Below, one piece after another: positions 8,373 through 44,733 of a stretch of 44,963 nucleotides of DNA. This stretch comes from Octopus bimaculoides (lineage: Eukaryota). The stretch covers positions 182,653,505-182,698,467 of the forward strand of contig NC_068981.1 of assembly GCF_001194135.2 (NCBI RefSeq), written 5' to 3'. The notes below the pieces were generated by a model that saw only the letters and a program-made list of their open reading frames with translations, did not search any database and was not told the DNA's origin. Every line of letters begins with the position of its first letter. Within the stretch, counting starts at the first letter, position 1. A program made the translations under genes and the position numbers.

Positions 8373-8690
8373 NNNNNNNNNNNNNNNNNNNNNNNNNNNN
8401 NNNNNNNNNNNNNNNNNNNNNNNNNNNNNNNNNNNNNNNNNNNNNNNNNNNNNNNNNNNNNNNNNNNNNNNNNNNNNNNNNNNNNNNNNNNNNNNNNNNN
8501 NNNNNNNNNNNNNNNNNNNNNNNNNNNNNNNNNNNNNNNNNNNNNNNNNNNNNNNNNNNNNNNNNNNNNNNNNNNNNNNNNNNNNNNNNNNNNNNNNNNN
8601 NNNNNNNNNNNNNNNNNNNNNNNNNNNNNNNNNNNNNNNNNNNNNNNNNNNNNNNNNNNNNNNNNNNNNNNNNNNNNNNNNNNNNNNNNN
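8373..8690. other. Assembly gap
   Basis: Run of N. Confidence 1.
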
Positions 8691-9682: not shown

Positions 9683-10166
9683 NNNNNNNNNNNNNNNNNN
9701 NNNNNNNNNNNNNNNNNNNNNNNNNNNNNNNNNNNNNNNNNNNNNNNNNNNNNNNNNNNNNNNNNNNNNNNNNNNNNNNNNNNNNNNNNNNNNNNNNNNN
9801 NNNNNNNNNNNNNNNNNNNNNNNNNNNNNNNNNNNNNNNNNNNNNNNNNNNNNNNNNNNNNNNNNNNNNNNNNNNNNNNNNNNNNNNNNNNNNNNNNNNN
9901 NNNNNNNNNNNNNNNNNNNNNNNNNNNNNNNNNNNNNNNNNNNNNNNNNNNNNGAGAGAGAGAGAGAGAGAGGGGGGGGGTTTCACCATTGCTTGACAAC
10001 TGGTTTATATCCCCGTAACTTAGTGGTTCGGCGAAAAGGAGACTGATAGAGGAAGCATCAGACTCAACAAAAAAAATAAGTACTGGGGTTGATTCATTCG
10101 ACTAAAAATTCTTCAAGGTGGTGCCCCAGCATGGCCACAGTCTAATGACTGAAACAAGTAAAAGAG
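9258..10166 (+). mobile_element. SINE family B split by an insertion, microsatellites and a gap
   Basis: Head at 9258-9405 (tgtgggaagaagc...gggttcagtcccactg) and tail at 9981-10166 (gcttgacaac...cagcatggccacagtc...gaaacaagtaaaaga). Confidence 0.75.
9683..9953. other. Assembly gap flanked by (GA)n
   Basis: Run of N. Confidence 1.
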
Positions 10167-11169: not shown

Positions 11170-11619
11170 TTAATCCATCAGCATTTAAACCAGCCATATC
11201 CTGCCCAAAATGTTCTACCTGTTTTAAGTTCAAACTGGCCAGATCTGGCCTCTCACATCTACATGACAATGTCATAAACAATCACATCATTGAAACCTCA
11301 AAGCTAAAAAATAATACATGATTAATTCAAAATAATCTTTTCTACTCTAGGCACAAGTCCCAAAATGTTGGGGGAGGGGGGGGGGCGCCAGTCAATTAGA
11401 TCAACCCCAGTATGCAACCGGTACTTAATTTATTGACCCCGAAAAAATGAAAGGCAAAGTTGACCTTGGTGGAATTTGAACTCAGAAAATAAAGACAAAC
11501 AAAATACCGCTAAACATTTCGCCCGGCATGCTAATGTTTCTGCCAGCTTGACTCCTTTAAAATAATGCAAATGAATATGCATTACATTTGACAGAGTAAT
11601 CTGAGCGCTAAAGGGTTAA
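11170..11619. mobile_element. piggyBac-like MITE (family D) with a nested SINE C (about 11340-11562, minus strand)
   Basis: TTAA at both ends; the family D body resumes after the SINE C insert. Confidence 0.8.
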
Positions 11620-17789: not shown

Positions 17790-18677
17790 TTGGGTTGAGG
17801 AATAATCCATGAATGTTTTTCTCAAATTTAAAAATGCACACAGAAATAAAATGCAATGGCAAAATATTTTATGCTATTTAAAAGAGAATGTTTTGCTCTA
17901 CAAGATAGTGTTTTCATTTTTTAATTCTATTATTTTTGTATATTTTCAGATCATTAAAATGGAATGTCAAGTGGACAAAACTGAACATTTTCAACACCAT
18001 TTGCTTTTTGCATTTAATTGAAGTGTTAAGGCTGCCAAAGCTGCTCTTGAGATTTATGCTGCTGTGTATGGACATGGAGCAATGCTTCAAAGTAGTGCTT
18101 GCCATTGGTTTTTGCACTTCAAAAATGGGAATTTTGACCTCAAAGATGGATCACACACCGGTCGACCAACTGAGAGAAGGTGGTTCACCAGTTTTTTTTT
18201 TTATCACAATGCATCTGCTCCACCAATTCTATGGTTGTTTGACATAGATTTTCATGAAGAAGTTGATTCAATCACTCATCTAACTCAATTGATCAATCTG
18301 TGTGTAATCTGTCCTTCAGGTCAAAATTTCCACTTTTGAAGCACAAGAACCAATGGCAAGGTAGTACTTTAGGCATTGCTCCTTCTCTATACACAGTACA
18401 AATCTCACAAGCAGCTTCAGTGGCCTTAATACCTGAATTTAATGCAAAAAGCAAATGGTGTCAAAAATGCTCAGTTTCGTCCACCTGACATTCCATTTTA
18501 ATGATCTGAAAATGCACAAAAATCAATAAAATTAAATAGATCAAAACACACTACCTTGTAGAGCAAAACATTCTCTTTCAAATAACATAAAACATTTTGC
18601 CAATGTGTTTTATTTGTGTGAATTTTTAAATTTGGAAAAGAAAAAAAAAAAAGCTCATGAATTATTCTTCAACCCAA
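17790..18677. mobile_element. Non-autonomous mariner derivative with two inverted 5' ends
   Basis: TIR TTGGGTTGAGGAATAATCCATGA / TCATGAATTATTCTTCAACCCAA+TA. Decayed Mos1-like HTH (MECQVDKTEHFQHHLLFAFN...VYGHGAMLQSSACHWFLHFKNGNFDLKDGSHTGRP). 18410-18677 is an inverted copy of 17790-18045. Confidence 0.85.
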
Positions 18678-18688
18678 TATATCTATAT

Positions 18689-18930
18689 ATAAAAATTATA
18701 ATTTTGGGTATCTAAGAGATACCACCATGCTTGAAATGACAGTCAAACTTTGACTCCAAAACCACATTAAATGTTCATACAGCACCAGGAAAAAAGACAA
18801 AGAGACAAAATAAACTAGCAAAAAATTACTGGAATTATCCAGTAATTTTTTGCTAGCTTATTTTGTCAAAGTTTGACTGCTATTTCAAGCATGGTGATAT
18901 CTCTTAGATACCCTAAATTATAATTTTTAT
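18689..18930. repeat. Near-perfect long inverted repeat (foldback)
   Basis: Arms 18689-18755 plus 18804-18833 pair with 18838-18930; 4-nt loop ATTA. Confidence 0.9.
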
Positions 18931-19986: not shown

Positions 19987-20326
19987 TGAAGGTGCATGGC
20001 TCAGTGGTTAGAGTAGAGCGTCGAGCTTACGATAGTGAAGTTGTGAGTTTGAATCCCGGACCGGGCTGCGTGTTGTGTTCTTGAGCAAGACACTTTATTT
20101 CACGTTGCTACAGTTCATTCAGCTGTAGAAATGAGTTGCGACGGCACAGGTGCCAAGCTGTATCGGCCTTTGCCTTTCCCTTGGATAACATCAGTGGTGT
20201 GGAGAGGGGAGGCTGGTATGCATGGGCGACTGCTGGTCTTCCATAAACAACCTTGCCCGGACTTGTGCCTGGGAGGGCAACTTTCTAGGTGCAAACCCAT
20301 GGTCAGTGATGACCGAAGGGGGTCTC
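19987..20326 (+). mobile_element. Full-length tRNA-derived SINE family F
   Basis: A box tggctcagtggttagag, B box gagtttgaatccc, central ttcttgagcaagacactttatttcac domain; flanked by (act)n. Confidence 0.85.
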
Positions 20327-20689
20327 AGAGACTACTACTAAGGCAGTGAGCTGGCAGTCATTAGCATGCCGGCCAAAATGCTTAGCGGCATTTTGTTTTG
20401 AGTTCAAATTCCACCGAGGTTGATTTTGCCTTTCATCCTTTCAGGGTCAATAAATTAAGTACCAGTTGCGCACTGGGGTCGATGTAATCGACTTAACCCT
20501 TCCTCCCAAATTTCAGGCCTTGTGCCTATAGTAGAAAGGATTGATTATTATTATTAAGATGGCAAACTGGTAGAATTGTTAGTACATCAGACAAATACTT
20601 AGCAGCATTTCGAGTTCAAATCTCACCTAGGTTGACTGCCTTTCATCCTTTCAGAGACAATAAAATAAGTACCAGTCAAGTACTGGGGG

Positions 20690-20732
20690 NNNNNNNNNNN
20701 NNNNNNNNNNNNNNNNNNNNNNNNNNNNNNNN
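20690..20732. other. Assembly gap flanked by poly-G
   Basis: Run of N. Confidence 1.
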
Positions 20733-21249
20733 GGGGGGGGGGGGTCGATATAATGGACTAGCCCTTCCCCACAAAATTTCAGGCCTTATGTCTATAGTAG
20801 AAAGGACTATTATTATTATTATTATTAAGATGGTGAGCTGGCAGAATCATCAGCATGCCAGGCAAAATGCTTTGTGGCATTCCATCCGTCCTTCCAGCTT
20901 CAGTTCAAATTCTGCACACGTTGACTTTGCCTTTCATCCTTTCAGGGTTGATAAAATAAGTACCAGTTGAGTACTGGGGTCGATGTAATCGACTATCCCC
21001 TCCCCCAAAATATTAAGCCTTGTACTTATAGAAGAAAGAATTATTATTATTTTAAGGGTATTTTATCCAATGCCCTAATCCTGCTAATAATCCTGCTAAC
21101 CTACTGTTACTAGTAGGAAGACTACATAGAATAACAGGTTACGTTAGTCCCAGCAAATTACCTAGTCACACACTAGGAATACTTTTGTAAAATCGCTGTC
21201 TAGATGCATCAAGCTAAGTGAAATCGCTGTCTTCCACATATATAAGCTT

Positions 21250-21412
21250 GTCCTTTCTGGTGCTGGTGCCGCATAAACAAACCTGTGCCGGTGGCACATA
21301 GAAAGCACCCAGCACAATCTACGTGGTTGGCATTAGGAAGGGCATCCAGCTGTAAAAACCATGCCACATGGCAGCATGGAAAGCAGACATTAACCAATGA
21401 TGATGATGATGA
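21250..21412 (+). mobile_element. RTE-type 3' tail fragment
   Basis: gtggttggcattaggaagggcatccagctgtaaaaac...gatgatgatga. Confidence 0.75.
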
Positions 21413-22238: not shown

Positions 22239-22522
22239 CTTCAATTTCATATATACTTGTAAGCTGAAAGACGCTTTCCCACAAATTGCACACTTTCACC
22301 AGAATAACCATTCAACCTTCAATGTTTCCAAATAAATAGAATGTAAACAGGTCCGTATTATCAACCATAGGAAGAGACAATGCAGAGGAAACCATATTAC
22401 AATGTTAAATCTGCTAAATCCAATGTCAGTGTCCCCTGAATTCCAGCAACCTGAGACAAAAGGTTGTATTTGAACAAAATTACTCAAGGCAAAATTTAGG
22501 GCTGGTGTATAAGAATACTTAC

Positions 22523-22569
22523 TGAAACAATATTTCTGGCACGTAAATAACGATAGATTTGGGTTGGTT
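22523..22569 (-). CDS. SUZ12: SUZ12 coding exon 2 (47 nt): (K)PTQIYRYLRARNIVS
   Basis: ttttgcag|AACCAACCCAAATCTATCGTTATTTACGTGCCAGAAATATTGTTTCA|gtaagt. Matches the conserved KPTQIYR(F/Y)LR motif and joins exon 1 in frame. Confidence 0.96.
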
Positions 22570-22846
22570 CTGCAAAAATAAAAGCAAAGTTTTACGATAA
22601 GAAAATAAAAAGGCTAAACAAGATATAATAGCAACAAATTAAAATAGTCATGGCAACAGAATGCAATTTGTACATTATCAGTTTAATCCAAAATGACCTT
22701 AAAAATTTTCCTCAATCCATCTTGTAGAGGCAGTTGTGCAGTTTATTTTCACTATATTCCCATAAATATATCTTTCCTCTTTTGCAAACAATATCTTTCA
22801 TGTCTTTTAATGCAGTAAATTCATCTCAGTAAATCAAAAAGAACTA

Positions 22847-22936
22847 TTGGATTGGTGCATAATTAACGACTATTTTTCATTCTAAAACTGTTGTAAATTA
22901 AATTATAAAACGGTCATTAATTATGCACCAACCCAA
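22847..22936. mobile_element. 90-bp mariner MITE (MADE1-like architecture)
   Basis: TA|TTGGATTGGTGCATAATTAACGAC...GTCATTAATTATGCACCAACCCAA|TA. Confidence 0.85.
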
Positions 22937-22999
22937 TACATCCATTTGTTCCTAACTACTGCAGGTCTTATTTGTTACAAACCATTTGTCACTGAAGGA

Positions 23000-31000: not shown

Positions 31001-31506
31001 TTTTTTTTGTGTGTGTCTGACAGAAACAGACATCCAATTAAATGATAGTTTTTTTTCTTCCTATCTTATTCAATCAAACTGGAGGAGTTGCAGAAATATG
31101 GAATTTCTTTTTATTAAATGAATATATTTAAAGCATTTAATAGATCTAAGACAAAATTATGGGAACAGTTAACTTCAGATCTTATAAAGCTATATGGCTG
31201 GATACACTGGATTATTTGAAAGGTGGGGAAAGGTTGAATGATGAACACGTGTATCTTCAGAATAGTATCTTTTGTTTATATACAATCTAACAGGATAATT
31301 ATTAAAAAATAAAATAATTAACTCATAATTAATCAGTAATAAATGGGCACATGTTTTAGAGATGTGTGAAACAGTATTACATATTTTTTAAAGTTTATTT
31401 TTTTAAAAATCGTATGTGGAGAAAATACTGGAAGTGAAGGGAGACTAATTAAGGGAGCAAAGAAAAAAATAAGTAGGAGACAAATAGCAATTATATTTAT
31501 ACTTAC

Positions 31507-31759
31507 TTTCAAAAGCTTGCAGGAAAAGTTCGTGATCAGCTTTGATAGTTTCATATTGAGAATCTTGTTGATTAGTGTTAGAATTGTGATTAGTTGTATT
31601 ATGATGTGTGCTATTGTGAGATATAGCATGTCCACTTTGTACATGATGGTGGTGTGGATTGGAAGAGATGTGGTGCTGCTGATGTTGGTGCTGCTGGCTA
31701 CCGATACCAGGTTTTTCGCCAACATTCGGCTTTTCTTTATCTCTCTTTCTAGGCTTCAT
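31507..31759 (-). CDS. SUZ12: Polycomb protein SUZ12, coding exon 1 (253 nt, 84 codons + 1 nt)
   Basis: ATG at 31759 has an in-frame TAA four codons upstream. Translation MKPRKRDKEK...ETIKADHELFLQAFE ends in the SUZ12 signature ADHELFLQAFE. The GTAAGT donor (acttac at 31501-31506) gives phase 1, matching exon 2. Confidence 0.96.
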
Positions 31760-34700: not shown

Positions 34701-35429
34701 TTCGTAAGGTGAACAAGAGCATCACAGAATCATCTCGTTTCTTTTTTCTCTAGCTTAATGCTATGTGCTCTGTGTAAGAAATCAAAATATTTTTAGCCTT
34801 CAAACCAGGATTTGAGATTTTAATGACTACCTTTGCCAATCAAGGGAGACTATCCATAGAATTTTACTTTTTTTTTTTTCTATTTCCTTGCTTAAAATTC
34901 TATCTTCCTTCACCTAGCACTTTTTTCCGGGAAAAACTAAGTAATTAATGTTTAAGTGAATGTATGTGTTTGTATATATAAAATTAAGTGGATTTAATAT
35001 CTGTTATAAATATGAGATAATATGAAACATTTTAAGAATCTGAAAATTTAATAAAACTTAAAAGGTTACATAGGTTTTTCTCAAAAAGCGAAAGTAAAAA
35101 ATAAAAAAAACCAGTTAATAGTGGTAAGGAATCGAATTTTATTTTATTACATAGTTTGGTGTTACAAAAGTAATAAAGAATATACAACTTGTAATTATTA
35201 AGAAATATCTATTTTAGAAGGTTAGTTATTGTGAGCTTAGGTGAACACCGTTCATTAGCGGGTAGGTTTTAGCGGGCAAAGTCTAGGACAAGATTTCCAT
35301 TCTCAATAGTAGCTATTTTTGTTAGATTCGATATCGTCTTTCGGAAACAAGCGAATTAAATTGTTTTCAAATGACACTACCAATTTTCTAGACAAATGTA
35401 TATGATATTTTTTGCACATATAAGATGTA

Positions 35430-35830
35430 TAGGAGGCGGGGGTAATAACCGGGGTAAAATGAGTAATTTTTGATTTCTCATTATGTTCTCCCCACCTGTT
35501 TGAAATCATTACATTACAAGAATCGCATCATCTTCAGGAGTAAAAATTGTTCAGCATAGTTGTTGTTGAAGTTGAGAGAGTCCAAGACATTCTCAGGTGG
35601 CAGATGCTTTTTTTTTTTTTTTTCAAGAAATATTCCCTAAACTTTGACCAGTTTGTAATCGAGGTTGCTAATATAATATCTGGATAATTTTTGGCGTTGA
35701 ACATCAATATTCTTTCCTCTTCTGGATCCCAAGTCAATTTTTTTCCCCACACTAATGTCTAATTTGATTATTTTCAATTTTCAAAAAAATATCTAAAATG
35801 GGACAAAATGAGTAATGACTAATTTCAACC
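35430..35830 (-). mobile_element. Possible pogo-like DNA transposon remnant
   Basis: Repeated GGG(G/A)(T/C)AAAATGAGTAA motif at about 35450 and 35800; GKKLTWDPEEERIL weakly resembles the CENP-B-type HTH linker. Confidence 0.3.
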
Positions 35831-36421
35831 ATTTCTTCTCTTTAACTAACTGCATGGTACTTAAATATATTGGAAAGAAAGCCACTCGTGAAGATCATGA
35901 AGAAGCTATAGAGAATATTTTATGCTGAGTTTTTCTTTTTATTTAGTCGAGTTTCGTTAATTTTATATGTGCAATTTTTCCCTGAGCCTCTTTCATATGA
36001 CCTAGATATTTATAAATTTTTGTTGCATTTCTGATCTTTTCTGATGTCTAGGGATGGATATCGATGTGTGTGAGTCTGTTCTCAAATGTGATTCTGGAGA
36101 ACTGAAACGACAAATTTACCTTATTTTGCTCCTGCTAAATTTGTCTTTATAGGCTCAAAGAGAACGGCGATAATTTTCTGAGATAGTGTTCGGATCATGT
36201 TATAATATTTTTATTACATTTAGAAACGGTCATTTGCTTAGCTCATATAATTTTTGTAACGTAGTGAACATCTGTAAAAAATATTTTTTTGTCTCAAAGT
36301 CAAAAATGCAGTAAAAACTCCTCAATGTGTCCCGCTCCCCCAAAAGATAGACAGGTGAGGGTGTCACAAGTAGGTTTATTAGTTTGACGCTCGGGAAAAA
36401 TGGAAAAGTCTGTGATGTTTA

Positions 36422-36423
<2 letters not shown>

Positions 36424-36484
<61 letters not shown>

Positions 36485-36488
36485 AATT
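36424..36488. repeat. (TA)n(TAA)n microsatellite
   Basis: Direct reading. Confidence 0.95.
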
Positions 36489-36545
36489 TAGACATATAAG
36501 TATAAGTCGACATTAAAAATCTGTAGTGAGACGTTTTTTATCGAT

Positions 36546-36590
36546 GTACCTGATGAGACCCAAACTAATGGGTCGAAACATATGTTGTAC
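36546..36590 (+). ncRNA. Minimal type I hammerhead ribozyme (Penelope-like element type)
   Basis: GTAC-CTGATGA-GACCC(AAACTAAT)GGGTC-GAAA-C(ATAT)G-T-T-GTAC. All core nucleotides are intact, helix II is 5 bp, helix I is 4 bp, helix III is the palindrome ACATATGT, and AATAAA follows at 36593. Confidence 0.8.
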
Positions 36591-38581
36591 CCAATAAAGA
36601 TTTAATTCTGAATCCATCTGTCAATATTTTATACACACATACACATACATACGGACAATGAGTATATCGGGATAAATAATCCAGGCGGATACCATAAGAA
36701 CTCTCGAACATAGTCCGGGTTCTGGATAAACGCATGTAGTAAGAAACATCAAAGATTGCTATGGGTGAGGAATCCCACTGTAATTCTGATGGGTAAATTC
36801 GGGTTTTAATTATGCTGTATAATTAACTGTTAAAATGAAAGAAAAATTTGAAGATGTACCAGTCCTCCATATTGTAATTGTTTTGGATATAGGATATATA
36901 TATATAGAGAGAGAGAGAGGGAGAGAGAGTGGATCTCCGACATTCGACTATGGTCCTGTGGGAGCATTCTACCGACACGTTTGCCCTTAACGTTGTTTTC
37001 TGGCAGAATCGGCGTGACATAGTCTATGACGAGGCTGTATATTTGAATTACAAATACAATCCAGCCGACGAGGCTTTATAAATTTCTGTCTACTCAGTTT
37101 TAATCAACCAAAGTCTATCGAAAACTTTTACCAAGATTCCATGCACTGGGATAAAACCCCTGACCTCTTAAGTGAGGAATGAACTCAACCATTCCGCCAA
37201 ACTCCACCTATACGCACGAACACACGTTTGAGTGTGTGTATGTGTCCGTAAAAAGAAAATATCGGTGTGTATATATTTTTATTCTAATAGTTTTAGTTGT
37301 AGGACTGGCCATGCTGTAGCACCGCCTTAACATGGGTATATAAATGGCTCATTATATGTTATACACACCGGTATTATATAGGCGTGCGTGGTGTATGTGT
37401 GTACACGCACGCCTTTCAGATTGCCCTCCCCTGGACTTTAATAAAACTTCTCGAAAAAACGCATATTTCTAAGTGAAATTTTACAGAGGTCATTTTTGTG
37501 AGGGTACGTTACGATTATAAAATTTTAAAAAAATTAATGAGTGTTGGATTATTCTCCTCCATTTCAACTTTGTTTCCTTATAACTCTAAAATGACATTTT
37601 GCAGAAATACATTTTCAGATGTCTAGATCACATTGGTGTTGATGTTTCAAATATATAAATTTGGAAAACAAGTGAAAAATGCCTAAGTTCAGAAATTCGT
37701 GATAACGAAGTCGAAGCAGGAGAGGAGTAAACGATGAGAAACGTTATCTTTTTCTTTTCTTTTTTTTTTTTAGTTCCTTAATTTTATTTACATGCCGTAT
37801 TTGATGGCTTAAACACACAGGCATATCATATGCACCACAATTTCAGCAATGCATATACGGGAAAGAAAACCTTTAGTACATTAAAACTCATGAGAGACTC
37901 AACTTTGCATGTAGGACCTGGAATGATTTTGAGATATTTGGTGGGTGGTGGAAATAACGCGCCTTAGATGCCATACAATATGGTAAATGTAAACAATCCT
38001 CTCGAAAACAGTAAACAGTTTGTTAAACAAGTAATTAATGCTGAAAGTACTTGAGTAAAAGCATAGGGCTTTTGGTAAACAACAAATGGTTTCTGTGTAC
38101 ACAAACGATACTGTAGGTACGATTTGTGATGCTACATGGTTATCAGACATGGACATTGAATTCTTTTTTAAGATCTGTAGAGATAAAGGAATCCGGTTTA
38201 ATTCATTGAATGTGCGATATTAATCAGCAGAGAAGGAGTTGGACAAGAAAACAAAGAAAGTGGTTTAGAATTAATAACATCAACTAATGTTTGTAAGAAA
38301 ATAGCAGCATCGAAATTTGATGAAAGCAGACGATTGCAGGATATAAAAGTGACAGAGAACGACTCAGAAAAGATTAAATCAAATCTCTCAGACAAAATGA
38401 CTCAAGATCAAGTGGGATGATTATATATCATACTACAGATCCAATACCCTCGGAGACACAAATGCTAAAAATTGTTTCTGATGATTGAAGTGAGCCTTAT
38501 TGGTTTGTTAGGACAGTATTCAAAATGTTCACTTCATCTGGTATAAGACAGTCAAGCTGCTGAAGCCCACACCCTCTTAAA

Positions 38582-38690
38582 CCTTACTGTAAATAACAGT
38601 GGGGTAAGGACACAAACTTGGTGAACTTGACCTGTACACTAAGATTCTCACTGAACTCATTGTTTGCTAAAACCTTGTTTTCAGCTCCCT
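38582..38690 (-). mobile_element. RTE reverse-transcriptase core fragment
   Basis: NNEFSENLSVQV / VHQVCVLTPLLFTV resembles the RTE motif EEF.V.VGVHQGSVLSPLLF, with a frameshift. Confidence 0.65.
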
Positions 38691-38759
38691 CATCTCCTAG
38701 AGAAGGAACTTGGAATACAAACTGACTTGAACTATAATGAACTGTCCAAGCCACACACC

Positions 38760-39255
38760 ACTGGGGTGCATTTACATGCCACCAGCACAGATGCACTTGG
38801 CTTGACAAGTCCTCTCAAGCACAGCACATTACCAAAGGTCTCAGTCATTGCCTCTGTGAGGCTCAAAGTTCAGAGATCATGCTTCACCATCTCATCCCAT
38901 GTCTTTTTGGGTCTACCCTACCACAGGTTCCCTCCACAGTTAGAGACCAGCACTCCTTTACACAGCTATCCTCGTCAATATGCATCACACAACCATACCA
39001 GCACAGTCATCTCTCTTGCACACCACATCTGATTCCTCTTATGTCTAACTTTTCTCTCAAGATGCCTACACTCTGTCGAACATGCACACTGACATTGCAC
39101 ATCCAGTGAAGCATACTGGCTTCATTACTTTCAGACATACGCATGTCCTCAGCGGTCATAGCCCATGTTCCACTGCCATGCAGCGTAACTGTTCGCACAC
39201 AGGCATCAAACAATCTGCCTTTCACTCTGAGAGAGAGGCCCTTTGTTGCCATCAG
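38760..39255 (-). mobile_element. RTE LINE C-terminal fragment
   Basis: TKGLSLRVKGRLFDACVRTVTLHGSGTWAM..EDMR...NEASMLHWMCNV...LREKLDIRGIRCGVQER...GRPKKTWDEMVKHDL. Confidence 0.9.
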
Positions 39256-39261
39256 GAATCA

Positions 39262-39553
39262 CTGGCGAAAGGATTAAAATTCCCTGTGGTGTAGTATACA
39301 GCTTAGTCACCCATGTAGTTAATCAGGTTATTCAGGAAGACACCATCCCCAATGACTGGTGTAGTAGTATTATAGTTAGCTGCTACAAGGGTAAAGGTGA
39401 TGCCTTAGATAGAAACAACTACAGAGGTATTAAATTGCTAGACCAAATGCCAAAGTGGAGAGAAGAGCTTGGCACAGTCCTCTGGCTAGCTAGCTCCTGT
39501 CAAACTGTCCAACCCATGCCAGCATAGAAAATGGACGTTAAATGATGATGATG
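39262..39553 (+). mobile_element. RTE RT N-terminal fragment fused to an RTE-type tail
   Basis: IPNDWCSSIIVSCYKGKGDALDRNNYRGIKLLDQ, then ccaacccatgccagcatag...aatgatgatgat. Confidence 0.85.
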
Positions 39554-40334: not shown

Positions 40335-40590
40335 AGCACGTAAAAAACATCATTTTGAATGTAGCTGTTGCCAGTACCACCTGACTGGCCCTCATGCTGG
40401 TGGCGCATAAAAGCACCCACTACACTCTCGGAGTGGTTGGCGTTAGGAAGGGCATCCAGCTGTAGAAACTCTGCCAGATTGGAGCCTGGTGCAGCCATCC
40501 GGTTCAGGTGCAGGCTTGGTGCAAACCTCAGTCAAATCGTCCAACCCATGCTAGCGAACGTTAAATGATGACAATGATGATGATGATGAT
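40335..40590 (+). mobile_element. RTE-type 3' tail element
   Basis: cactacactctcggagtggttggcgttaggaagggcatccagctg...(atg)n. Confidence 0.85.
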
Positions 40591-41130: not shown

Positions 41131-41581
41131 NNNNNNNNNNNNNNNNNNNNNNNNNNNNNNNNNNNNNNNNNNNNNNNNNNNNNNNNNNNNNNNNNNNNNN
41201 NNNNNNNNNNNNNNNNNNNNNNNNNNNNNNNNNNNNNNNNNNNNNNNNNNNNNNNNNNNNNNNNNNNNNNNNNNNNNNNNNNNNNNNNNNNNNNNNNNNN
41301 NNNNNNNNNNNNNNNNNNNNNNNNNNNNNNNNNNNNNNNNNNNNNNNNNNNNNNNNNNNNNNNNNNNNNNNNNNNNNNNNNNNNNNNNNNNNNNNNNNNN
41401 NNNNNNNNNNNNNNNNNNNNNNNNNNNNNNNNNNNNNNNNNNNNNNNNNNNNNNNNNNNNNNNNNNNNNNNNNNNNNNNNNNNNNNNNNNNNNNNNNNNN
41501 NNNNNNNNNNNNNNNNNNNNNNNNNNNNNNNNNNNNNNNNNNNNNNNNNNNNNNNNNNNNNNNNNNNNNNNNNNNNNNNNN
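41131..41581. other. Assembly gap
   Basis: Run of N. Confidence 1.
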
Positions 41582-42858: not shown

Positions 42859-43157
42859 NNNNNNNNNNNNNNNNNNNNNNNNNNNNNNNNNNNNNNNNNN
42901 NNNNNNNNNNNNNNNNNNNNNNNNNNNNNNNNNNNNNNNNNNNNNNNNNNNNNNNNNNNNNNNNNNNNNNNNNNNNNNNNNNNNNNNNNNNNNNNNNNNN
43001 NNNNNNNNNNNNNNNNNNNNNNNNNNNNNNNNNNNNNNNNNNNNNNNNNNNNNNNNNNNNNNNNNNNNNNNNNNNNNNNNNNNNNNNNNNNNNNNNNNNN
43101 NNNNNNNNNNNNNNNNNNNNNNNNNNNNNNNNNNNNNNNNNNNNNNNNNNNNNNNNN
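42859..43157. other. Assembly gap flanked by (CCT/CCA/CAT)n
   Basis: Run of N. Confidence 1.
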
Positions 43158-44020: not shown

Positions 44021-44511
44021 TATCTCAAAATATAAGTACTAGTGCAAAGTTTAAATATTTTGTTTCTAAGAAAAATCATAACATCTCTAATCACCCCCTC
44101 ACCCCATTGTGTTCCTTTGACATTTGGTGTCCACTTGTGAGCTCACAAACCCTCTCCCTCCCATAAGGAGGTGTGATCCAGGCTAAGAATGTTGGGTTAT
44201 ACAGAAGGACAATAATAAACACAGGCAAACCTCAACTTATGCCGTTTTAAGTTACATCTTTTTCAACTGCAAATTATTTAAATTTTTTTCTGTTAGGATT
44301 AACGAGAAAAAATAAACCTCAACTTTCATTGTTTTATTCGACTTACGTCATTCTCAGCAAACATATTAAAAACATTAAGATTTTTAAAAACCCCACCAAA
44401 TACCCAATACCGAAGTGGAACTATGGCTGTATTTAGAGGCATTAGTTTACCCTTGTACTGTTTCAATCAATTCTCTGCTCTTACTAGAACAGTTATTAAT
44501 ATAGAGTAACA

Positions 44512-44733
44512 TCAAGGCAGTGAGCTGGCAGAAACATGAGCACATTGAGTAAAATGCTTCGTATCATTTCATCCATCTTTACATTCTGAGTTCCATTTCC
44601 ACCAAGGTTGACTTTGCCTTTCATCCTTTCGGGGTTGATAAAACAAGTACCAGTTGAACACTGGGGTTGATGCAATCGGCTTAAACCCACCTCTAAAAAG
44701 GCTGGTTTTGCACCAAAGTTTGAAACCAATATA
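44512..44733 (+). mobile_element. SINE family C
   Basis: gagctggcagaa...gactttgcctttcatcctttcggggttgataaaacaagtaccag. Confidence 0.85.

What the first reader, a model, noticed from the sequence alone, without database searches (positions are those of the whole stretch)
36546..36598. Intact minimal hammerhead ribozyme upstream of SUZ12
Seen: every catalytic core base is in register. Helix I is GUAC/GUAC, followed by CUGAUGA, helix II GACCC/GGGUC (G10.1-C11.1), GAAA, a 2-bp helix III inside the perfect palindrome ACAUAUGU, and cleavage triplet GUU (cut after 36586); AAUAAA starts 6 nt after the cut site. Established: minimal type I hammerheads with a palindromic helix III occur in the terminal repeats of Penelope-like elements and related non-autonomous retrozymes, and cleave mainly as dimers. 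Inference: this is a solo, apparently unmutated element end with no Penelope ORF nearby. It is oriented divergently from SUZ12 at the edge of its promoter domain, so it could cleave or terminate a promoter-antisense RNA, or mark an undescribed cephalopod retrozyme-like family.
Basis: partly seen in the sequence, partly recalled or inferred. Interest (0 to 1): 0.85.

Follow-up and report, generated by a model that had tools for sequence, protein, structure and literature searches.

The report
Lone retroelement-type hammerhead ribozyme motif
A complete small self-cutting RNA motif (a type I hammerhead) lies 4.8 kb upstream of the SUZ12 gene, but it is a single isolated copy of a kind that Penelope-like retroelements and their derivatives scatter through animal genomes, so it is most likely an ordinary retroelement remnant, not a regulator of SUZ12.

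Summary
At 36546-36590 (+) every hammerhead core base is in register: helix I GUAC/GUAC, CUGAUGA, helix II GACCC/GGGUC, GAAA, palindrome ACAUAUGU, and a cut after U36586. Rfam Hammerhead_1 scores 29.9 bits, below the gathering score of 34, with E=0.0017 for the whole window. Only 1 of 3000 shuffled windows gives a hammerhead with a palindromic helix III.

It is the only such motif in 45 kb. Its flank is not repeated, it sits in no tandem array, and I found no reverse transcriptase or GIY-YIG reading frame. The 405-bp unique segment carrying it is bracketed by (TA)n tracts, an AT-rich setting of the kind Penelope-like elements insert into. Its RNA is not unusually self-paired.

SUZ12 exons 1-3 are confirmed on the minus strand. 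The motif lies 4,787 nt upstream of the start codon, and no compositional "promoter domain" is visible.

Best reading: an inert solo remnant of a hammerhead-bearing retroelement, either a 5'-truncated Penelope-like element or a retrozyme monomer. Efficient cutting probably needs a partner copy, and none is nearby. Penelope elements are abundant in cephalopod genomes.

I could not test copy number, covariation or conservation in related species, because no cephalopod genome was reachable. This is a new member of a known kind and of low interest.

The parts
36546..36590 (+). Complete type I hammerhead ribozyme motif (helix I open-ended)
   Evidence: Rfam Hammerhead_1, 29.9 bits, model 1-45. It is the only hit of my own descriptor in the window.
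36546..36549 (+). Helix I, 5' strand GUAC; pairs with 36587-36590
   Evidence: Sequence. 4 bp only, and it does not extend (U36545 faces C36591).
36550..36556 (+). Core box C3-A9, CUGAUGA
   Evidence: Sequence. It is the only CTGATGA...GAAA pair in the window.
36557..36574 (+). Helix II GACCC/GGGUC (G10.1-C11.1; a 6th pair A-U is possible) with loop 2 AAACUAAU
   Evidence: Sequence, and MFE folds that always form this hairpin. The loop resembles the Rfam consensus CCCA..AAU.GG.
36575..36578 (+). Core G12 A13 A14 plus A15.1 (GAAA)
   Evidence: Sequence
36578..36585 (+). Helix III region, the perfect palindrome ACAUAUGU. Within one molecule it forms 2 bp (A-U, C-G) plus the tetraloop AUAU. Between two molecules it forms an 8-bp helix III.
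   Evidence: Sequence. RNAcofold of two copies pairs the palindromes.
36586..36586 (+). U17, the predicted cleavage site (cut between 36586 and 36587; triplet GUU)
   Evidence: Position in the motif. Cleavage itself was not tested.
36587..36590 (+). Helix I, 3' strand GUAC
   Evidence: Sequence
36593..36598 (+). AAUAAA hexamer 6 nt after the cut site. It may be a poly(A) signal of the parent element, part of an AU-rich closing stem (36535-36541 with 36594-36600, seen by eye only), or chance.
   Evidence: Sequence. Background frequency is 1.8e-3 per nt. The closing stem is not recovered by MFE folding.
36424..36487 (.). (AT)23.5 (ATA)6.7 microsatellite directly upstream of the unique segment that holds the hammerhead; candidate AT-rich insertion target
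   Evidence: TRF
36488..36892 (+). 405-bp unique segment holding the hammerhead, bracketed by TA-repeat tracts; candidate insertion unit (boundaries inferred, not proven)
   Evidence: GC is 0.37 against 0.29-0.31 upstream. No copy elsewhere in the window. The RNA is not unusually structured, z=+0.3.
36895..36929 (.). (TA)6 (AG)12 microsatellite on the downstream side of the unique segment
31508..31759 (-). SUZ12 exon 1 coding part (ATG at 31759), given as context. Exons 2 (about 22502-22588) and 3 (about 2460-2525) lie further left on the minus strand.
   Evidence: ORF. The concatenated exon peptides match PDB SUZ12 chains at E=6e-20.

Best explanation
This is a solitary remnant of a hammerhead-carrying retroelement. 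The most likely parent is a heavily 5'-truncated Penelope-like element (PLE) fragment that includes its pLTR hammerhead. The alternative parent is a monomeric derivative of a PLE-related non-LTR retrozyme. Either would have been inserted by reverse transcription into an AT-rich (TA)n tract in the intergenic DNA 4.8 kb upstream of SUZ12.

In the parent element the motif sits in multimeric or tandem transcripts. There, two copies pair their palindromic helix III (ACAUAUGU) to make a double hammerhead that cuts after U17 and leaves 2',3'-cyclic phosphate and 5'-OH ends. At this locus the core is intact but no second copy lies within 45 kb. If the plus strand is transcribed at all, cleavage would depend on a 2-bp helix III or on rare pairing between two separate transcripts, or on help from a PLE protein. 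The motif is therefore most likely idle and has no role in SUZ12 expression.

Shown: the motif, its statistical significance, its solitude, the absence of a PLE ORF, the flanking TA tracts and the SUZ12 geometry. Inferred: the retroelement origin, the dimer mechanism at this copy and its inactivity.
For: - The motif is complete and significant.
- It shows traits listed as diagnostic of real PLE and metazoan hammerheads and not imposed by the core alone: a G10.1-C11.1 pair, palindromic 15.2-16.2 and loop 3, and a short helix I (PMC4209133). A helix III of 2 bp plus a tetraloop is described as typical of invertebrate hammerheads (PMC7229834).
- Most PLE hammerheads in a genome occur as single motifs, interpreted as probably related to truncated PLEs. 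Retrozyme monomers are dispersed evenly along chromosomes and enriched in intergenic DNA (bioRxiv 10.64898/2026.07.22.740005).
- PLEs favour AT-rich or (TA)n targets (PMC8557442; PMC11167929). The hammerhead-bearing 405-bp segment is bracketed by (AT)23(ATA)7 and (TA)6(AG)12.
- Penelope elements are among the abundant, anciently expanded repeat families of coleoid cephalopods (PMC8967140; PMC13282606).
- There is no second hammerhead, no repeat of the flank and no RT or GIY-YIG ORF.
- Single minimal hammerheads show no or low cleavage in vitro, and a PLE hammerhead needed its protein to cleave.
Against: - No other genomic copy could be examined. Membership of a repeat family, covariation and the boundaries of the insertion are therefore unproven.
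- The score is below the Rfam gathering threshold (29.9 against 34).
- The motif lacks two traits of the commonest PLE min-HHR: the bulged nucleotide between A9 and G10.1, and a helix II of 7-8 bp.
- TA tracts are common here (12 in the window). A second tract within 470 nt has roughly a 12% chance expectation, so the 'inserted into (TA)n' argument is weak.
- No reading frame continues from the hammerhead, unlike the Anolis Poseidon element in which the ORF starts inside the hammerhead (frames read).
- That the window comes from a cephalopod was not verified with tools.
Confidence: 0.74

Rival explanations
1. The motif is a dispersed monomer of a still-active, so far undescribed cephalopod non-LTR retrozyme family. 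Such families are tandem repeats with hammerheads that are expressed as small circular RNAs.
For: - Type I hammerhead with a helix III of 2 bp plus a palindromic tetraloop, as in invertebrate retrozymes.
- Low-GC unit of about 400 bp, within the published size range of 51-972 bp.
- Intact core.
- Retrozymes co-occur with PLEs, and PLEs are abundant in cephalopods.
- My literature search found no paper describing cephalopod hammerheads.
Against: - There is no tandem unit here.
- The 405-nt RNA is not highly self-paired, as linear or circular (z=+0.3), unlike described retrozyme circRNAs.
- Helix I is 4 bp, not the canonical 6 bp, and no recognisable loop 1-loop 2 contacts were shown.
- A single monomer cannot be excised as a circle.
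Confidence: 0.14
2. The motif is a chance occurrence in AT-rich intergenic DNA and has no ribozyme ancestry.
For: - Helix I is only 4 bp and the score is below the Rfam gathering threshold.
- A loose descriptor hits 1.2% of shuffled windows, which would mean hundreds of hits per gigabase-sized genome.
- No second copy is available to show covariation.
Against: - With the palindromic helix III only 1 of 3000 shuffles hits.
- The Infernal E-value extrapolates to about 0.02 for one family over about 2.7 Gb.
- G10.1-C11.1, a 5-6-bp helix II and a loop 2 resembling the metazoan consensus are extra matches that the core does not require.
- Real hammerheads of this kind are expected to be frequent in a PLE-rich genome.
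Confidence: 0.08
3. The motif is an exapted cis-acting ribozyme. Together with the adjacent AAUAAA it would cleave or terminate an upstream antisense or intergenic transcript that diverges from the SUZ12 promoter.
For: - Intact core.
- Orientation divergent from SUZ12.
- AAUAAA 6 nt after the cut site, about 1.8% by chance.
- Isolated, conserved hammerheads with roles in mRNA biogenesis exist in amniotes (cited in PMC7229834).
Against: - The motif is 4,787 nt from the ATG, and no compositional promoter domain reaches it.
- No transcript evidence is available.
- Helix III is too weak for efficient cleavage in cis, and single minimal motifs are inactive or poorly active in vitro.
- No reads ended at the cut site even for an expressed PLE hammerhead.
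- Conservation could not be tested.
Confidence: 0.04

Closest known systems
Hammerheads of Penelope-like elements: min-HHRs and the variants with a small palindromic helix III (Cervera & de la Pena 2014, PMC4209133)
   Same: Type I topology, intact core, G10.1-C11.1, short helix I (4-5 bp), and palindromic 15.2-16.2 and loop 3 that imply action as a dimer. These motifs mostly occur as single dispersed copies interpreted as truncated elements, and they associate with AT-rich or microsatellite targets.
   Different: Here there is no bulged nucleotide between A9 and G10.1, and helix II is 5-6 bp, not 7-8 bp. No pLTR pair and no RT/GIY-YIG ORF were found in the window, and family copies could not be examined.
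Canonical type I hammerheads of metazoan non-LTR retrozymes and satellite DNAs (newt satellite 2, Schistosoma Sm-alpha, mussel and coral retrozymes; PMC7229834; Rfam RF00163)
   Same: Best Rfam match is Hammerhead_1. Helix III is 2 bp plus a palindromic tetraloop. Loop 2 resembles the consensus (CCCA...AAU). The context is low in GC.
   Different: Helix I is 4 bp, not 6 bp, and loop 1-loop 2 contacts were not demonstrated. There is no tandem repeat, the RNA is not highly self-paired, and the cleavage triplet is GUU, not GUC.
Poseidon PLE of Anolis carolinensis (PAc; PMC11167929)
   Same: The hammerhead is close to an element end and insertion goes into AT-rich DNA. An AC-rich run (36633-36652) lies 47-66 nt 3' of the cut site. 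This loosely recalls the AC-rich stem-loop where PAc reverse transcription starts, 111-118 nt into its ORF.
   Different: No ORF starts in or continues from this hammerhead. The AC-rich run is a common microsatellite type in this window and forms no significant structure. The resemblance is a lead only.
Isolated hammerheads in mammalian and amniote genomes (HH9/HH10 and similar)
   Same: Single copy near or in a gene, not in a tandem array.
   Different: Per Rfam, HH9 and HH10 are separate families in the hammerhead clan. From memory, they are ultraconserved, structurally stable type III motifs that are efficient in cis. Here the topology is type I with a dimer-type helix III, and conservation is unknown.

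Membership tests
Hammerhead ribozyme, type I (Rfam RF00163) | Conserved catalytic core: C3 U4 G5 A6 N7 G8 A9, G12 A13 A14, A15.1-U16.1, H17 | tested here: met
   All positions are present in register at 36550-36556, 36575-36578, 36585 and 36586.
Hammerhead ribozyme, type I (Rfam RF00163) | Three helices around the core, with helix I open-ended | tested here: met
   Helix I is 4 bp, helix II is 5-6 bp, and helix III is 2 bp plus a tetraloop or 8 bp as a dimer.
Hammerhead ribozyme, type I (Rfam RF00163) | Score at or above Rfam's curated gathering threshold (34 bits) | tested here: not met
   29.9 bits. It is still significant (E=0.0017 for the window). The deficit comes from the short helix I, the loop 2 insertion and U17.
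Hammerhead ribozyme, type I (Rfam RF00163) | Site-specific self-cleavage after H17 | not testable with these tools
   This needs in vitro transcription or RNA-end mapping.
Penelope-like element (PLE) terminal hammerhead | The motif lies in a pseudo-LTR flanking an ORF with telomerase-like RT and GIY-YIG endonuclease | tested here: not met
   There are no RVT or GIY-YIG Pfam hits in the three + frames of 35000-39000, and no YxDD or GIY/YIG motifs in low-stop context anywhere in the window. A truncated copy would lack them, so this does not exclude a PLE origin.
Penelope-like element (PLE) terminal hammerhead | A second hammerhead in the other flanking repeat (direct, about 3 kb away) or in an inverted neighbour | tested here: not met
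   Only one motif was found on either strand in 45 kb.
Penelope-like element (PLE) terminal hammerhead | min-HHR architecture: short helix I, G10.1-C11.1, palindromic 15.2-16.2/loop 3, extra nucleotide between 9 and 10.1, long helix II | tested here: inconclusive
   The first three traits are met. The bulged nucleotide is absent and helix II is 5-6 bp (compared with PMC4209133).
Penelope-like element (PLE) terminal hammerhead | Insertion into an AT-rich or microsatellite target | tested here: inconclusive
   TA tracts lie on both sides of the 405-bp segment. Such tracts are frequent in the window (about 12% chance expectation), and no clear target-site duplication was found.
Penelope-like element (PLE) terminal hammerhead | Member of a multi-copy genomic family showing covariation in helices I and II | not testable with these tools
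   No cephalopod genome was reachable. Metagenome scans gave nothing relevant. The protein database lacks this locus.
Metazoan non-LTR retrozyme | Head-to-tail tandem units (about 150-450 bp), each with a type I hammerhead | tested here: not met
   There is no tandem or dispersed copy of 36488-36900 in the window and only a single hammerhead.
Metazoan non-LTR retrozyme | The unit RNA is highly self-paired and accumulates as circRNA | tested here: not met
   The MFE of 36488-36892 is no better than shuffles, as linear or circular (z=+0.37 and +0.31). circRNA expression is not testable here.
Metazoan non-LTR retrozyme | Low GC content (<45-50%) | tested here: met
   GC is 0.37 at 36500-36999. 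This is uninformative, because the whole window is AT-rich.

The most novel reading that the evidence does not exclude
The lone hammerhead has been co-opted. It would be conserved at the orthologous position upstream of SUZ12 in cephalopods and, with the adjacent AAUAAA, would cut or terminate a divergent non-coding transcript. That would make it an invertebrate example of a domesticated retroelement ribozyme acting in the regulation of a Polycomb gene.
Probability: 0.03. Interest if true: 0.6.

Novelty: new member of a known kind. Interest (0 to 1): 0.15.

Why it matters
It matters little on its own. Minimal type I hammerheads left by Penelope-like elements and retrozymes are reported in thousands of copies in many metazoan genomes, mostly as single dispersed motifs. 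Cephalopod genomes are rich in Penelope elements, so one intact copy in intergenic DNA is expected. The finding is useful as an annotation: a hammerhead-bearing repeat fragment near SUZ12. It is also a seed for cataloguing cephalopod hammerhead and retrozyme families, which my literature search did not find described. It would become interesting only if the site proved conserved across species or cleaved in vivo.

Tried and rejected
1. Finding other copies or orthologous loci.
- The protein database search with the SUZ12 exon-1 peptide found nothing.
- Exact look-up of 10 window ORFs, including the one overlapping the hammerhead, found none in the collection.
- I therefore could not fetch cephalopod contigs and did not spend further protein searches.

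2. Public DNA scans.
- The specific pattern CTGATGAGACCC..GGGTCGAAACATATGT gave 0 hits in metagenomes.
- The relaxed pattern CTGATGAG..CGAAACATATGTT gave one hit (L120). It has no helix II and no Rfam hit, so it is a chance match.
- A generic helix II pattern in viral contigs gave more than 119 matches. I did not inspect them, and they are not informative about this lineage.

3. PLE ORF search.
- Pfam on the + frames of 35000-39000 found no RT or endonuclease.
- A hallmark-motif regex over all six frames of the window found nothing.
- The minus frames were not scanned with Pfam.
- Two ORFs at 39.0-39.5 kb that look like LINE RT fragments by eye gave no Pfam hit.

4. Retrozyme-like rod structure: rejected.

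5. Structured AC-rich stem-loop downstream, as in the Anolis PLE: not significant.

6. Target-site duplication: only a doubtful 28-nt, 75% match dominated by TA repeats.

7. Promoter-domain claim: GC and CpG profiles show no domain boundary near the motif.

8. An extended helix I (internal loop CGAU/CCA plus the 7-bp AU stem 36535-41/36594-600) can be drawn by eye. MFE folding does not recover it. MFE instead predicts an alternative hairpin that sequesters part of the CUGAUGA box.

Full report
**Observation.** The plus strand at 36546-36590 reads GUAC-CUGAUGA-GACCC-AAACUAAU-GGGUC-GAAA-C-AUAU-G-U-U/GUAC. This is a complete type I hammerhead.
- Helix I is 4 bp (GUAC/GUAC).
- The core bases C3-A9, G12-A14, A15.1 and U16.1 are all present, and position 17 is U.
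- Helix II has the G10.1-C11.1 pair and is 5 bp, or 6 bp with A36562-U36569.
- Helix III lies inside the perfect 8-nt palindrome ACAUAUGU.
- The predicted cut is between 36586 and 36587, and AAUAAA starts at 36593.

**Significance.**
- Rfam at gathering thresholds reports nothing in the window.
- With E-value reporting, Hammerhead_1 (RF00163) matches 36546-36590 over the full model at 29.9 bits against a gathering score of 34. E=1.4e-5 for the 351-nt stretch and 0.0017 for the whole window against all 4227 families.
- The missing bits come from two absent helix I pairs, a 4-nt insertion in loop 2 and U17 in place of C17 (alignment).
- My own descriptor required CUGANGA, helix II of at least 4 bp, GAAA, U16.1, H17 and helix I of at least 4 bp. 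It finds only this site on either strand. It hits 35 of 3000 dinucleotide-shuffled windows, and only 1 of 3000 when helix III must be palindromic.
- Scaling the Infernal E-value to one family and about 2.7 Gb gives about 0.02. This is my arithmetic, and the genome size is an assumption.
- The motif is therefore real in the statistical sense, although it would not be auto-annotated by Rfam.

**Folding.**
- As a 45-48-nt monomer, the MFE keeps helices I and II but mispairs the core.
- In longer context an alternative hairpin pairs UAUCGA with part of the CUGAUGA box.
- Two copies co-fold through the palindrome. This is the double-hammerhead geometry described for newt, viroid and PLE motifs (PMC4209133).
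- Within one molecule, helix III can only be A-U and C-G closed by AUAU. PMC7229834 describes a 2-bp stem plus tetraloop as typical of invertebrate hammerheads.

**Surroundings.**
- The window is AT-rich eukaryotic DNA with many interspersed repeats, microsatellites and five assembly gaps.
- SUZ12 exons 1-3 lie on the minus strand, with the ATG at 31759, exon 2 near 22502-22588 and exon 3 near 2460-2525.
I then confirmed them independently: the concatenated exon peptides match PDB SUZ12 chains at E=6e-20.
- The hammerhead is therefore 4,787 nt upstream of the start codon, on the opposite strand.
- GC and CpG observed/expected between 30 and 38.5 kb show no island or boundary that would make this an 'edge of the promoter domain'.

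**Is it part of an element?**
- No second hammerhead, even a weak one, exists in the window.
- The 413 nt from 36488 has no other copy in the window apart from short microsatellite matches.
- There is no tandem array.
- The three plus-strand frames of 35000-39000 contain no RT or GIY-YIG domain. No YxDD or GIY/YIG hallmark occurs in open context anywhere in the window.
- No reading frame continues out of the hammerhead; all frames stop within about 15 codons. This differs from the Anolis Poseidon element, whose ORF starts inside its hammerhead (PMC11167929).
- The unique 405-bp stretch 36488-36892 is bracketed by (AT)23.5(ATA)6.7 and (TA)6(AG)12. It is slightly richer in GC than the upstream DNA.
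- PLE endonucleases prefer AT-rich DNA, and PLEs show a microsatellite, notably (TA)n, insertion bias (PMC8557442; PMC11167929). This fits an insertion into a TA tract.
- That argument is weak, because TA tracts are frequent here: 12 in the window, giving about a 12% chance of a neighbour within 470 nt. No convincing target-site duplication was found.
- The 405-nt RNA is not unusually self-paired (z=+0.3), unlike retrozyme circRNAs.

**Related sequences.** I could not reach any cephalopod genome.
- The protein index returned nothing for SUZ12 exon 1.
- None of 10 window ORFs is in the protein collection.
- Metagenome scans gave zero hits and one spurious hit.
- A generic helix II pattern matched more than 119 viral contigs. 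I did not inspect them, and they say nothing about this lineage.

**Literature context.**
- Minimal and small-palindromic-helix-III type I hammerheads occur in PLE pseudo-LTRs. They are found in thousands of copies in metazoan genomes, mostly as single motifs thought to mark truncated PLEs. They show little or no cleavage as monomers (PMC4209133).
- Canonical type I hammerheads belong to tandem non-LTR retrozymes (PMC7229834).
- Retrozymes appear to derive from PLE pLTRs, and their monomer derivatives are spread evenly through genomes and enriched in intergenic DNA (bioRxiv 10.64898/2026.07.22.740005).
- A purified PLE protein was needed for its hammerhead to cleave, and no RNA-seq reads ended at that cut site (PMC11167929).
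- Penelope elements are among the abundant, anciently expanded repeats of octopus and squid genomes (PMC8967140; PMC13282606).
- A search for hammerhead ribozymes in octopus found no dedicated description.

**Interpretation.**
- The best explanation (about 0.74) is an inert solo remnant of a hammerhead-bearing retroelement, either a truncated PLE end or a retrozyme monomer. It keeps an intact core but lacks the partner copy that its dimer-type helix III calls for.
- Rival explanations and my confidence in each:
  - a monomer of an active, undescribed cephalopod retrozyme family: 0.14
  - a chance motif: 0.08
  - an exapted cleavage or termination device for a SUZ12-divergent transcript: 0.04
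- The last is the most novel reading still open. The distance from the gene, the absence of transcript evidence and the weak cis architecture all count against it.

**Verdict.** This is a new member of a known kind and of low interest (0.15).

Noticed in passing
window 22845-22938: A 94-nt near-perfect palindromic hairpin with TIR-like ends (TATTGGATTGGTGCATAATTAA / TTAATTATGCACCAACCCAATA). It gives sub-threshold mir-548 hits on both strands (52 and 45 bits, gathering score 90). It looks like a MITE and lies about 260 nt from SUZ12 exon 2.
   Followed up: partly
window 17839-18620 and 18797-18876: Nested inverted repeats (arms 17919-18061/18394-18536 at 83% complementary, and 17839-17914/18545-18620 at 88% complementary). 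Beside them is a hairpin with weak mir-15/MIR6024-like hits. Both lie in a SUZ12 intron.
   Followed up: no
window 39007-39252 (-) and 39243-39527 (+): Two short ORFs on opposite strands resemble, by eye, flanking segments of non-LTR (LINE) reverse transcriptases (for example '...NYRGIKLLDQ'). Pfam gave no hit, so this rests on memory only. They are 2.4 kb from the hammerhead and are not PLE-like.
   Followed up: partly
window 8373-8690, 9683-9953, 20690-20732, 41131-41581, 42859-43157: Runs of N (assembly gaps) show that the window comes from a draft assembly. Repeats next to the gaps may be collapsed.
   Followed up: yes
window 1-31000 and 39000-45000 (e.g. 20323-21040, 11378-11577, 44494-44681, 21323-21379, 40433-40489): Several families of interspersed SINE-like repeats of about 50-190 nt occur in both orientations through the SUZ12 introns and the upstream region. 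ARAGORN finds no tRNA-like heads.
   Followed up: no
window 31445-31759 (-): SUZ12 exon 1 encodes a long His/Gln/Asn-rich low-complexity N-terminus before the conserved ADHELFLQAFE motif. Introns 1 and 2 are about 9 kb and 20 kb.
   Followed up: partly
window 36633-36652: An AC-rich run (ACACACATAC x2) lies 47-66 nt 3' of the hammerhead cut site. It loosely recalls the AC-rich site where reverse transcription starts in the Anolis PLE. However, it is a common microsatellite type in this window and is not significantly structured.
   Followed up: partly
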